Assembly (NCBI RefSeq): GCF_947568905.1
Contig: NC_079170.1
Span: 53,506,001-53,570,000, forward strand
DNA from: Ostrea edulis
Lineage: Eukaryota
Direction: 5' to 3'
DNA: 64,000 nt
A program made the position numbers and the translations under genes. The notes under the pieces were generated by a model that had not been told where the DNA came from, did not search any database, and was given only the letters and a program-made list of their open reading frames with translations. Below, one piece after another: positions 19,201 through 64,000 of this stretch; the first letter of the stretch is position 1; every line of letters begins with the position of its first letter.

Positions 19201-20661
19201 TGATATGATGAGGTGTTGGTATTAAACCTTTACTTTTAAAGCTTGAATTTTTTTCATATATTTTGATAATTTTACAATAATTTGATAGTAAATTTTTCTT
19301 CAGATAAAACACCAGTTGTGTTAGGAATAGTGCGAAATGAACATGTGGAAGGAATTAAAGCTAACTGGGACACGGTAGATCTAGATGCAGACAAACTAGC
19401 AACGTAAGTACATAGAAGATCCCAATCCAGACAAACTAGCAATGTCAGTACATAGAAGATCCCAATCCAGACAAACTAGCAATGTAAGTACATAGAAGAT
19501 CCCAATCCAGACAAACTAGCAATGTAAGTACATAGAAGATCCCAATCCAGACAAACTAGCAATGTAAGTACATAGAAGATCCCATTCCAGACAAACTAGC
19601 AATGTAAGTACATAGAAGATCCCAATCCAGACAAACTAGCAATGTAAGTACATAGAAGATCCCAATCCAGACAAACTAGCAATGTAAGTACATAGAAGAT
19701 CCCAATCCAGACAAATTAGCAATGTAAGTACATAGAAGATCCCAATCCAGACAAACTAGCAACGTAAGTACATAGAAGATCCCAATCCAGACAAACTAGT
19801 AATGTAAGTACATAGAAGATCCCAATCCAGACAAACTAGCAATGTACATGTAAGTACATTGAAGGTCCCAATCCAGACAGACTAGCAATGTAAGTACATT
19901 GAAGGTCCCAATCCAATCAGATAATCTTTGATGAAAGAATTTTGCTGGAAAATTGAGTACATGTGTTTAAGTCAGACTTTAGATTAGGCCAACCATGATA
20001 AATTTTAAATTTTACTGTAACTTTGTCTTAAGTTATATAAGAGGGGATGAAAATGTAAACAAACAAAATTTCAAAACACTGCAGTCTAATACGTGCATCT
20101 TTGTAGTGTGTATCCAACTATACATCTTCAGAAGCCAAGAGTCTGACTTGCTGTCACTCTAATATACCCTTAGGCAGATCTAGTCCCATTTTATATGGCA
20201 CCCCCACCACCACCACACACACACCTATAGTGCTTTTCACAAAAGATCTTACGATAAATAATCATCGTAAGAGAAAATGTACGATTTTTTTCCCTTTTCA
20301 CAAAGAAACTTACATATATTTAAAACTTTCCAAACCTACGTACATGGTTGATGTAAAATGAAGAATTCATTTAAGTCTTATGTAGTGGATAGATTATCAG
20401 TATATTAGATAACAGTGGAGTTTTGAATCTGCTGCAATCAGTTAATACTACTTTATCAGTTATCACCAATAACAAATAACACTTTTTATTACAAAGTCAT
20501 AATGCACTGTTGTACACTTTGTTTCCAGTTTAGAGAAGAATTATGCGCTGTACGAAGGCTTGAAGTATGGTGCTGTGATAATGACAATCACCTTTTTTTA
20601 TACAAGAAGACTGCGCAATAGAAAAGCCTGGGACAATTATTTCAATGTAAAAAGACGCTAA
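14379..20661 (+). CDS. Divergent TraB-domain protein (TRABD-like), 7 coding exons, about 310 aa, with C-terminal transmembrane anchor
   Basis: Exons 14379-14519 (acceptor at 14357; the start may lie further upstream), 16240-16392, 16637-16735, 17170-17315, 17493-17653, 19304-19403, 20529-20661. Phases are consistent. Collinear with TRABD as I recall it: GSRVYLLGT, IQQLQPSVVSLQCCSTR, NGLVSALL, DFRRAL, IPNCKLHLADIP, FISDRNRYLTYSLKKAA, PVVLGIVRNEHVEGIKANW, then a hydrophobic segment followed by RRLRNRK. Confidence 0.85.
15550..16140. mobile_element. Non-autonomous element ending in a long hairpin (Crypton-like, tentative)
   Basis: Arms ttattaactcgtgtggggtagggaaattccacc...gtctaggac and gtcctagac...ggtggaatttccctatcccacactcgtactaataa surround the loop tcggcaaagcctc (16004-16138). 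A similar short hairpin lies near 45080-45160. The family assignment is from memory of such elements. Confidence 0.4.
16152..16202. repeat. (CT)n microsatellite
   Basis: Pure CT run about 35 nt upstream of the acceptor at 16239. Confidence 0.95.
18398..19202. mobile_element. Non-autonomous TIR element (CAGGGTTG termini, hAT-like)
   Basis: Starts cagggttgg and ends ccaaccctg; subterminal ggtcaata/tattgacc repeats at both ends; no clean TSD found. Confidence 0.55.
19388..19915 (+). repeat. 40-bp minisatellite containing the exon end and 5' splice site of the TRABD-like exon 6, 13 copies
   Basis: Unit cagacaaactagcaat|gtaagtacatagaagatcccaatc; the first unit overlaps the exon (donor at 19404). 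Confidence 0.95.
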
Positions 20662-20835
20662 CATGATCTCTTAAAATTTTCATACAACATATTATAGTAA
20701 ATAAATGTATTCATAATATATTTTGATTTCATTTTATTTTTATTTAAGAAACTATATTTGCTGTATCTGTTTGTAAAGTTACTTTCACTGTAATCCATAT
20801 AGTACTAACTACCTGCAAATTCATGTACCAGACTT

Positions 20836-62900: not shown

Positions 62901-64000
62901 CACCACAGCCCACAACATACCCCTCACATACCCTACTGAAGCCCACAACATTCCCCACTGCAGCCTACTATATACCCCACTACAGTCCACTATATATCCC
63001 ACTACAGCCCACTATATACCCCACTACAGCCCACTATATATCCCACTACAGCCCACTATATACCCCACCACAGCCCACTATATACCACACTACAGCCCAC
63101 TATATACCCCACTACAGCCCACTATATACCCCACCACAGCCCACTATATACCCCGCTACAACCCACTATATACCCCAATACAGCTCACTTTACACCCCCC
63201 TACAGCCCACTATATACCCCACTGCAGCCCACTATATATCCCACTACAGCCCACTATATACCCCACCACAGCCCACTATATATCCCCCTACAGCCCACTA
63301 TATACCCCACTACAGCCCACTATATATCCCACTACAGCCCACTATATATCCCACTACAGCCCACTATATACCCCACTACAGCCCACTAAATATCCCCCTA
63401 CAGCCCACTATATACCCCACCACAGCCCACTATATACCCCACCACAGCCCACTATATACCCCCCTACAGCCCACTATATACCCCACTACAGCCCACTATA
63501 TATCCCACTACAGCCCACTATATACCCCACCACAGCCCACTATATACCCCCCTACAGCCCACTCTATACCCCACTACAGCCCACTATATACCCCAATACA
63601 GCCCACTATATACCCCACCACAGCCCACTATATACCCCACCACAGCCCACTATATACCACACCACAGCCCACTATATACCCCACCACAGCCCACTATATA
63701 CCCCGCTACAACCCACTATATACCCCAATACAGCTCACTTTACACCCCCCTACAGCCCACTATATACCCCACTGTAAGCCACTACATACCCCACTACAGT
63801 CCACTATATACCCCACTGCAAGCCACTACATACCCCACTACAGTCCACTATATACCCCACTACAGCCCGCTATATACCCCACCACAGTCCACTATATACC
63901 CCACTGCAAGCCACTACACATCCCACTACAGCCCACTATATACCCCACCACAGCCCACTATATACCCCACTGCAAGCCACTACATACCCCATGTCTCGAT
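57302..64000 (-). CDS. XPOT: Exportin-T, 3' end (gene continues beyond the window)
   Basis: Exons (minus): beyond 64000 to 63988 (IETW G), 60758-60644 (GGNNGLVG-FVDFMYKSFLPACFLGPMKPTFDLNDGQTSL, 1-nt deficit), 58817-58770 (ALGECAHCLKCMVDKR), 58608-58537 (GQEFLTYLSTDYLPVLNVPAENIQ), 58046-57993 (EFCEALKTDYRTFRTYLK), 57328-57302 (NFFLKAKS*). Collinear with the vertebrate XPOT C-terminus as I recall it. Confidence 0.9.
58469..58562 (-). repeat. Perfect 47-bp tandem duplication spanning an XPOT exon-intron junction
   Basis: tttagagagtatgaacattacctgaatgttttcagctggtacattta x2; on the minus strand each copy contains ATTCAG|GTAATG. Confidence 0.95.
58922..59699 (-). mobile_element. Internally deleted hAT-type transposon in an XPOT intron
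   Basis: Termini cagggttcca / tggaaccctg; minus-strand SAFNQSGKKGRIWLDDGEKGMTCCV resembles the TTF-type zinc finger at the N-terminus of hAT transposases; flanked by gtgta on both sides. Confidence 0.65.
60850..62610. mobile_element. Non-autonomous Tc1/mariner-like element (TA TSD) in an XPOT intron
   Basis: ta|cagtacccgcaatgttatacttgacat ... atgtcaagaataacgttgcgggtactg|ta; subterminal cacgata/cctgata arrays. Confidence 0.75.
62800..63987 (-). repeat. 22-bp minisatellite (tacagcccactatataccccac), about 50 copies, starting at an XPOT donor
   Basis: On the minus strand the unit reads gtggg|gtatatagtgggctgta and begins directly after exon end TGG G|GTATGT at 63987; the source of the spurious ORF 62719-63777. 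Confidence 0.95.

What the first reader, a model, noticed from the sequence alone, without database searches (positions are those of the whole stretch)
19388..63987. Recurrent splice-donor-seeded tandem arrays: four independent cases in three genes within 45 kb
Seen in sequence: four intronic tandem repeats with unrelated units (40 bp, 27 bp with a higher-order unit, 47 bp, 22 bp) each begin at a 5' splice site in the direction of transcription and carry copies of the last exon bases plus the donor. The sites are TRABD-like 19404, homeobox 47526, and XPOT 58536 and 63987. The other minisatellites in the window show no such link. Inference: duplications spanning an exon-intron junction may be tolerated because the first donor still works and the extra copies fall into the intron. 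They could then expand into decoy-donor arrays that act as a length-variable modifier of splicing or NMD, or as raw material for intron gain and micro-exons. A mechanistic link to splicing (R-loops, pausing or repair at donors) is also possible. I do not know of this being described as a genome-wide pattern in molluscs.
Basis: partly seen in the sequence, partly recalled or inferred. Interest (0 to 1): 0.9.

Follow-up and report, generated by a model that had tools for sequence, protein, structure and literature searches.

The report
Minisatellites that begin at splice donors
Four unrelated tandem repeats in three oyster genes each really do start on an exon end plus its splice donor; this is a kind of repeat long known in human genes such as F7 and CBS, and it is unusual here only because it recurs so densely.

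Summary
All four arrays exist as described, and all four sit on real 5' splice sites.

- **TRABD-like donor:** the exon ends at 19403. RNA contigs from two runs join 19403 to 20529.
- **Homeobox donor:** the exon ends at 47525. The Pfam homeodomain profile continues across the intron.
- **Two XPOT donors:** the exons end at 58537 and 63988. The exons are collinear with XPOT homologues.

Every array carries copies of the last exon bases plus the donor: 16, at least 9, 26 and 4 exon bases respectively.

Under uniform placement of the 15 intronic arrays, about 0.24 donor-anchored arrays are expected. P(at least 4) is about 4e-5 to 1e-4. That figure is nominal, because the window was picked after the fact from 792 scanned windows of this genome.

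The kind is not new. Borensztajn et al. 2006 (PMC1557585) list human F7, CBS, IFI6, LMNB2 and PDGF minisatellites whose first unit spans an exon-intron boundary. In F7 only the most upstream donor is used.

My best reading is that these are neutral junction-spanning duplications, tolerated because the first donor keeps working, and later expanded.

Decoy use, NMD tuning, intron gain and a splicing-linked mutational hotspot remain untested.

First readers of this scan noted similar donor arrays, and also acceptor arrays, in many other windows of this genome. All of those notes are unchecked.

The parts
19304..19403 (+). TRABD-like penultimate coding exon. Its last 16 bases (19388-19403) form the start of array unit 1.
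Evidence: RNA contigs of X1 and X2 cover 19301-19403 with no differences and join 19403 to 20529. The open frame runs across all junctions.
19388..19915 (+). Case 1: 40-bp x 13 array. Each unit is exon tail plus GTAAGT. Reading through the first donor gives ACG TAA, an immediate stop.
   Evidence: DNA contigs of X4 and X6 enter the array from both sides (up to 19417 and from 19817) and break inside it.
19404..20528 (+). TRABD-like last intron, 1125 nt, GT..AG.
   Evidence: Joint 19403->20529 in two RNA runs.
20529..20661 (+). TRABD-like last coding exon (44 codons plus the stop), with a hydrophobic C-terminal stretch and AATAAA downstream.
47424..47525 (+). Homeobox exon encoding homeodomain profile positions 9-45. 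It ends TCG|GTAAGT.
   Evidence: Pfam PF00046, E = 2.6e-8, profile positions 9-44. Sequence. The exon start is inferred from the acceptor and has no RNA check.
47526..51820 (+). Homeobox intron, 4295 nt. It holds the 27-bp arrays and 11 copies of the exon end plus donor at 48244, 48317, 48422, 48987, 49416, 49489, 49594, 49889, 50184, 50262 and 51646.
47533..50255 (+). Case 2: 27-bp x 102 array with 51/73-bp higher-order units. An approximately 1174-bp block occurs twice (48181-48466 and 49355-49637).
51290..51639 (+). Second run of the same 27-bp unit near the 3' end of the same intron. It is closed by one more exon-end-plus-donor copy at 51646.
51821..52021 (+). Homeobox exon encoding VWFQNRR... 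(homeodomain profile positions 46-57). Its end is approximate.
   Evidence: Pfam PF00046, profile positions 44-57. Acceptor atacag|GTGTGG.
63988..64000 (-). Last 13 bases of an XPOT exon (..IETWG). The exon is cut by the window end.
   Evidence: IETWG matches IELWG of P0147. It is exactly collinear with the next exon, GGNNGL against GGSNG or GGTNGL.
62793..63991 (-). Case 4: 22-bp array of about 53 units. It begins 4 bases before the donor G at 63987.
60761..63987 (-). XPOT intron, 3227 nt. No homologue-matching exon lies inside it.
60642..60760 (-). XPOT exon, Exportin-T profile positions 587-623.
   Evidence: Pfam PF19282, E = 3.2e-5. tblastn against P0015, P0145 and others.
58537..58614 (-). 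XPOT exon ending ..PAENIQ, CAG|GTAATG.
   Evidence: tblastn: P0015 residues 353-378, P0145 residues 921-946, P0110 residues 200-225. Collinear with the exon 58052-57993.
58469..58562 (-). Case 3: perfect 47-bp tandem duplication of 26 exon bases plus 21 intron bases. Using the second donor would add 47 nt and reach a TAA stop at the eighth inserted codon (after seven sense codons).
57993..58052 (-). Next XPOT exon (EFCEALKTDYRTFRTYLK). It is the last or next-to-last coding exon.

Best explanation
These are four independent, locally born minisatellites of different ages. Each began as a short tandem duplication (22 to about 51 bp) that happened to span an exon-intron junction.

Such a duplication leaves the exon and its own donor untouched and places the copy of exon tail plus donor inside the intron. 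The spliceosome keeps using the most upstream donor, the one that follows the real exon. The allele is therefore close to neutral, and the array can then grow by slippage or unequal exchange like any other minisatellite.

The arrays are passengers rather than devices. Their density reflects a genome with very many intronic minisatellites and short introns.

Shown: the anatomy, the reality of all four donors, and use of the first TRABD-like donor. Inferred: the neutral origin, the expansion mechanism and silence of the decoys.
For: - **Array anatomy:** the exon-tail share of the unit is 16/40, at least 9/51, 26/47 and 4/22, a spread that random breakpoints would give.
- **Different ages:** unit identity is 100%, 94%, 87% and about 79%, and the units are unrelated.
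- **Exon came first:** the copied exon tails encode residues aligned to homologues or to Pfam profiles at conserved junctions.
- **First donor is used:** TRABD-like RNA contigs from two runs use only the first donor and give an open frame to the stop.
- **Decoys look unconstrained:**
  - In case 1, eleven of the 12 later units carry CAAT where the exon keeps CAAC before G. That is a CpG-to-TpG change, which would be non-synonymous in the exon.
  - In case 4, most decoys have lost the +5 G and about nine have lost the GT.
  - In case 2, four of the 11 copies have GC or AT at the donor.
- **Local origin:** DNA depth at the edges of the case-1 array is about 1-2 times the single-copy baseline. 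Transposon parts of the same introns reach 10^3 to 10^4 times baseline.
- **Precedent:** F7 IVS7 pseudo-sites are functional but silent, because the most upstream site is selected (PMC1557585).
Against: - A purely neutral, uniform-placement model predicts only about 0.24 donor-anchored arrays here. Four were found (P about 4e-5 to 1e-4).
- The excess grows if transposon-borne arrays are removed from the denominator.
- First-reader notes report windows with 3 to 7 such arrays elsewhere in this genome (unchecked).
- The RNA evidence comes from assembled contigs, which drop rare isoforms, so low-level decoy use is not excluded.
- Only one of the four donors has RNA support.
Confidence: 0.6

Rival explanations
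1. Exon-intron junctions are true mutational hotspots for the birth of tandem duplications in this oyster. Possible causes include transcription, splicing or chromatin-linked fork stalling or repair at exon boundaries. On this view, junction arrays are enriched well beyond what random placement gives.
For: Four of 15 intronic arrays are donor-anchored against 0.24 expected. Several of the non-anchored arrays are transposon-borne rather than locally born. Many unchecked notes describe 3 to 7 junction arrays per window elsewhere in the genome, at acceptors as well as donors.
Against: - The window was chosen after the fact from 792.
- A rough genome-wide expectation under the null is up to about 0.2 per gene-rich window. 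That is on the order of 100 or more across 792 windows, and it is not exceeded by the 48 notes found.
- The breakpoints show no preferred position relative to the donor.
- No mechanism is known, and I found no paper reporting one.
Confidence: 0.2
2. The arrays are maintained by selection as functional elements. They might be decoy or auxiliary U1 binding sites that strengthen a sub-optimal authentic donor. They might also divert a copy-number-dependent share of transcripts to truncated or NMD-targeted forms.
For: The authentic donors are imperfect (AAC|GTAAGT, TCG|GTAAGT, GGG|GTATGT). Every decoy use would give an early stop. In human IFI6 and CBS the proximal pseudo-sites are used (PMC1557585).
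Against: Decoy donors decay. No decoy joint appears in the RNA contigs. The unit sequences and periods share nothing. The 47-bp case is a fresh two-copy duplication with no time for selection to have acted.
Confidence: 0.08
3. The direction is reversed. A pre-existing intronic array supplied the donor, and the exon end is itself a repeat unit that was recruited into the exon.
For: In case 4 only 4 exon bases are shared. In case 1 the copied exon tail (..DKLAT) lies in a poorly conserved part of the protein, and no orthologue was available for comparison.
Against: In cases 2, 3 and 4 the exon tails encode residues aligned to a Pfam profile or to homologues, with the junction exactly collinear. 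Exon-side copies keep coding-compatible bases while the array copies drift.
Confidence: 0.07
4. The arrays, or their copy numbers, are assembly artefacts.
For: Short-read contigs cannot span the arrays. A gap elsewhere in the window shows that the assembly is imperfect.
Against: Independent DNA runs from two studies reproduce both edges of the case-1 array without differences. The arrays have internal variant structure and higher-order blocks typical of real minisatellites. The other three arrays were not checked.
Confidence: 0.05

Closest known systems
Human F7 intron 7 37-bp VNTR (Borensztajn et al. 2006, PMC1557585)
   Same: The first monomer spans the exon-intron boundary (4 exon bp plus 33 intron bp). 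The donor is reiterated 4 to 8 times in the intron, and only the most upstream site is used. Case 4 also shares 4 exon bases, and case 1 matches closely.
   Different: The host is an oyster. Copy numbers reach about 53 units (case 4) and 102 (case 2). Polymorphism and silence of the pseudo-sites have not been shown experimentally here.
Human CBS intron 13 31-bp VNTR and IFI6 (6-16) intron 2 minisatellite, as summarised in PMC1557585
   Same: The minisatellite lies on the exon/intron border and provides many donors.
   Different: [quoted passage not shown] No such use was seen here, although only contigs were available.
Human LMNB2 100-bp and PDGF intron 4 81-bp repeats, as summarised in PMC1557585
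   Same: [quoted passage not shown] This resembles the homeobox intron.
   Different: The homeobox array consists mostly of a 27-bp sub-unit without a donor. Junction copies occur only in higher-order units.
Intron gain by tandem duplication of an AGGT-containing exon segment (Hellsten et al. 2011, PMC3265369; Ma et al. 2016, PMC4974935)
   Same: A tandem duplication yields duplicated splice signals, and splicing hides the extra copy.
   Different: In that model a new intron is created inside an exon. Here the introns already exist at conserved positions and only get longer.

Membership tests
Junction-spanning minisatellite with reiterated 5' splice sites (F7 IVS7 type) | Head-to-tail tandem array inside an intron | tested here: met
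   TRF rows for all four arrays. Host introns are defined by RNA joints or by homology.
Junction-spanning minisatellite with reiterated 5' splice sites (F7 IVS7 type) | The first monomer contains the last exon bases plus the authentic donor | tested here: met
   The exon share is 16, 26 and 4 bases in cases 1, 3 and 4. In case 2 the 24-bp junction part of the 51-bp higher-order unit is the exon end, while the plain 27-bp unit starts at intron base 8.
Junction-spanning minisatellite with reiterated 5' splice sites (F7 IVS7 type) | The donor sequence is repeated in later monomers | tested here: met
   Case 1: 11 GTAAGT copies. Case 2: 7 GT copies plus 2 GC. Case 3: 1 identical copy. Case 4: 4 identical and 31 GTATAT copies.
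Junction-spanning minisatellite with reiterated 5' splice sites (F7 IVS7 type) | The most upstream donor is the one used | tested here: inconclusive
   Met for the TRABD-like gene at contig level in two RNA runs. Rare decoy use cannot be seen in contigs.
Junction-spanning minisatellite with reiterated 5' splice sites (F7 IVS7 type) | Copy number varies between individuals (VNTR) | not testable with these tools
   Only short-read contigs were available, and they break inside the array.
Intron gain by tandem duplication (Rogers model) | A new intron lies between duplicated exon segments at a position that lacks an intron in relatives | tested here: not met
   The introns separate non-duplicated, homologue-collinear exons. 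The homeodomain intron lies between profile positions 45 and 46.
Transposon-borne satellite | The array lies inside an element with termini, or its unit is dispersed at high copy number | tested here: not met
   The units contain host exon sequence. The junction 16-mer occurs nowhere else in the window. Depth at the case-1 array edges is near single copy. By contrast, the arrays at 60882-61046 and 62389-62585 lie inside an element with 32-nt inverted termini.

The most novel reading that the evidence does not exclude
In this oyster genome, exon-intron junctions (donors and, according to other notes, acceptors) are preferred birthplaces of minisatellites. On this reading there would be hundreds of natural arrays of competing splice sites. 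They would reflect an unknown link between exon boundaries and tandem duplication, or selection for auxiliary splice-site arrays, and would form a length-polymorphic layer of splicing variation.
Probability: 0.28. Interest if true: 0.7.

Novelty: new member of a known kind. Interest (0 to 1): 0.45.

Why it matters
Each array is a natural experiment in 5' splice site choice: up to dozens of near-identical donors compete for one acceptor, in a non-vertebrate.

If the density seen here holds genome-wide, two things would follow. The oyster would offer hundreds of such experiments. It would also raise a real question about why tandem duplications arise, or survive, at exon boundaries.

If the density does not hold, these are ordinary neutral by-products of a minisatellite-rich genome. 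They would then matter mainly as a trap for gene prediction and variant calling.

Tried and rejected
- **Is the 27-bp homeobox unit a decayed copy of the exon tail?** The local alignment score is not above shuffles or random window pieces (p = 0.12 to 0.17). Rejected: only the 24-bp junction part is exon-derived.
- **Confirming the TRABD label.** Pfam on single exons gave no TraB hit. The protein atlas on one exon gave only noise. The label stays unverified, but the gene is expressed, spliced and has an open frame.
- **XPOT exons between 60766 and 63987.** Homologue slices found none. The only collinear match is the 5 residues at the window edge, so this is a single 3.2-kb intron.
- **RNA check of the XPOT and homeobox donors, and DNA check of those arrays.** I spent it on the donor that homology could not settle: it carries an in-frame stop at the junction.
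- **Sequencing runs.** The first request for sequencing runs failed as busy, and I repeated it unchanged. All runs were kept as contigs, so rare decoy junctions and copy number could not be measured.
- **Literature.** Searches for a genome-wide or mollusc description found none. A preprint on oyster Helitron satellites has nothing on splice junctions.
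Full report
**What was claimed.** Four intronic tandem arrays with unrelated units are said to begin at a 5' splice site and to carry copies of the last exon bases plus the donor. 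The sites are in three genes within about 45 kb. The proposal is that such junction duplications are tolerated, expand into decoy-donor arrays, and may reflect a genome-wide pattern.

**Are the arrays there?** Tandem Repeats Finder gives the following:

| Case | Coordinates | Unit and copies | Matches |
|---|---|---|---|
| 1 | 19388-19915 | 40 bp x 13.1 | 94% |
| 2 | 47533-50255 | 27 bp x 102, with 51- and 73-bp higher-order rows at 48181-48466 and 49355-49637 | about 79% |
| 2 (second run) | 51290-51639 | same 27-bp unit | — |
| 3 | 58469-58562 | 47 bp x 2.0 | 100% |
| 4 | 62793-63991 | 22 bp | 87% |

- **Case 1.** Reading the sequence and splitting the units shows 13 units. Each is 16 exon-tail bases followed by GTAAGT. 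Unit 2 has GTCAGT, and unit 12 has a 6-base insertion.
- **Case 2.** The plain 27-mer starts at intron base 8. The 16-mer AGGTGTCGGTAAGTCC (9 exon bases plus 7 intron bases) recurs 11 times inside the intron with at most 3 mismatches, and nowhere else in the window on either strand. Seven copies keep GT, two have GC and two have AT.
- **Case 3.** This is a perfect duplication of 26 exon bases plus 21 intron bases.
- **Case 4.** The first unit holds TGGG|GTATGT. Of about 53 units, 31 read GGG|GTATAT, four have the same nine bases as the authentic site, and about nine lack GT.

The four units are unrelated apart from the donor motif.

**Are the donors real?**

- **TRABD-like.** This donor was the least certain, because reading through it gives ACG TAA, so it could have been the true stop with the array in a 3' UTR. 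I therefore spent the single reads call here.
  - RNA contigs from two runs (X1 and X2, one study) carry the exons 16238-16391, 16637-16733, 17168-17313, 17493-17650 and 19301-19403, as the aligner reports them.
  - The contigs join 19403 to 20529, skipping 1125 nt with GT..AG ends.
  - With boundaries refined to 16238-16392, 16637-16735, 17170-17315, 17493-17653, 19304-19403 and 20529-20661, the spliced sequence has one frame open through all junctions to a stop at 20659-20661.
- **Homeobox.** The exon ending at 47525 matches Pfam Homeodomain profile positions 9-44 (E = 2.6e-8). The exon starting at 51821 (VWFQNRR) matches positions 44-57.
- **XPOT.** A search with the exon 60760-60642 returned Exportin-T relatives (Pfam PF19282).
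  - tblastn of P0015, P0145 and P0110 places four collinear exons at 60760-60642, 58817-58770, 58614-58537 and 58052-57993. This fixes the donor after 58537.
  - The 13 bases at the window edge read IETWG. Homologues read IELWG or VDLWG directly before the GGxNG that opens the 60760 exon.
  - The acceptor cctag|GTGGCAAC completes the split glycine codon. The exon therefore ends at 63988, and a single 3227-nt intron follows.

**Is it more than chance?**

- I listed the 15 minisatellites that lie in introns of the three genes. Each was given the probability u/(I+u) of spanning the donor of its own intron, where u is the unit length and I the intron length.
- The expected number is 0.24. P(at least 3) is 1.2e-3 and P(at least 4) is 4e-5, or 1.3e-4 with a more generous target.
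- The excess is larger if transposon-borne arrays are dropped.
  - The two arrays at 60882-61046 and 62389-62585 lie inside a 1.8-kb element with 32-nt inverted termini.
  - The small TRABD-like arrays lie in DNA whose depth is 10^3 to 10^4 times the baseline.
- Two cautions apply.
  - The window was singled out from 792 windows of this genome. The same null predicts on the order of 0.1 to 0.2 anchored arrays per gene-rich window, so many dozens genome-wide by chance alone.
  - I could not test any other window.
- First-reader notes list 48 hits for 'donor minisatellite', 20 for 'donor tandem exon' and 16 for 'acceptor tandem exon', some claiming 3 to 7 arrays per window. These are unchecked leads. 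The total is compatible with the null. The clustering would not be, if it were confirmed.

**What is it?**

- The exon tails that were copied encode residues aligned to homologues at conserved junctions. In cases 2 to 4 the exon therefore came first and the array copied it.
- The decoy copies behave as unconstrained DNA.
  - In case 1, eleven of the 12 later units have CAAT where the exon keeps CAAC before G. That is a CpG-to-TpG change, which in the exon would replace Thr by Ile.
  - In cases 2 and 4 many copies have lost GT or the +5 G.
- The arrays differ in age, from 100% down to about 79% unit identity.
- Depth at the edges of the case-1 array is close to single copy, so the array is local rather than a dispersed satellite.
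- The simplest account is four independent junction-spanning duplications. They were tolerated because the first donor, which follows the real exon, goes on being used, and they then expanded.

**Comparison with what is known.**

- Borensztajn et al. 2006 (PMC1557585) state that several genes hold minisatellites whose first monomer spans an exon-intron boundary, so that the donor is reiterated in the intron.
- Their examples:
  - **IFI6 (6-16):** 25 pseudo-sites, with the two proximal ones used.
  - **CBS intron 13:** 15-20 repeats, with two pseudo-sites used.
  - **LMNB2:** 10-15 repeats of 100 bp, with only the authentic site used.
  - **PDGF intron 4:** 16-18 repeats of 81 bp.
  - **F7 intron 7:** 37 bp, made of 4 exon bases plus 33 intron bases.
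- For F7 they show that the pseudo-sites are functional but silent, because selection runs 5' to 3' and takes the most upstream site.
- The oyster arrays meet the anatomical criteria of this class. Use of the first donor is met at contig level for one gene. Polymorphism could not be tested.
- They are not cases of intron gain by duplication (PMC3265369, PMC4974935), because the introns pre-exist.
- I found no paper describing a genome-wide or mollusc-wide pattern.

**What decoy use would do (inference from sequence).**

- In case 1, any decoy splice leaves the TAA directly after the exon. The product would lack the last 44 residues, including the hydrophobic tail.
- In case 3, the second donor would add 47 nt, with a TAA stop at the eighth inserted codon.
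- No decoy joint was seen. However, assembled contigs drop rare forms, so this shows only that the first donor dominates.

**The assembly gap.** The gap at 32558-32689 lies in AT-rich non-coding DNA, well away from all three genes. Continuity across it cannot be tested here. It matters only for the stated 45-kb distance.

**Verdict.** The tolerance argument is supported. The functional and mechanistic ideas are untested. These are new members of a known kind of repeat, at a density that deserves a proper genome-wide test.

Noticed in passing
window 60845-62615: A roughly 1.8-kb element with 32-nt terminal inverted repeats (91% complementary) and sub-terminal 21-bp and 16/41-bp tandem repeats at both ends sits in the XPOT intron. 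It is probably a non-autonomous DNA transposon. Its arrays came with the element and were not born locally.
   Followed up: partly
window 53781-54498: A 31-bp x 23 array (95% matches) ends 27 nt before the probable acceptor of the next homeobox exon (ttttcag|TTTACA at 54526). It does not copy the acceptor.
   Followed up: partly
window 15550-16149 and 18350-19349: Two stretches of TRABD-like introns have word depths of 10^4 to 10^5 in DNA runs, against a baseline of about 29. They are also present in RNA runs. They are high-copy repeats, presumably transposons.
   Followed up: no
window 50311-50685, 50956-51250, 52276-52396, 55305-55464: A partly palindromic, AT-rich 21/42-bp repeat family (AATTGATGCGCGCATTAATTC-like) occurs at four places in and beyond the homeobox gene. 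It looks dispersed rather than junction-derived.
   Followed up: no
window 48181-48466 and 49355-49637: The homeobox array contains a block of about 1174 bp that is present twice, with the same order of junction copies. This is a large higher-order duplication inside the minisatellite.
   Followed up: partly
window 59929-60009: A run of 41 G is followed 15 bases later by a run of 25 T, inside an XPOT intron.
   Followed up: no
window 5500-11200 (+): Long open frames with endonuclease- and reverse-transcriptase-like sequence, probably a non-LTR retrotransposon, lie upstream of the TRABD-like gene.
   Followed up: no
window 16272-17562 and 20577: The RNA contigs (labelled organism A) differ from the window at a few exon bases where the DNA runs (labelled organism B) agree with the window. 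Examples are 16272, 16332, 17258 and 20577. These are allelic or close-relative differences, not evidence of editing.
   Followed up: no
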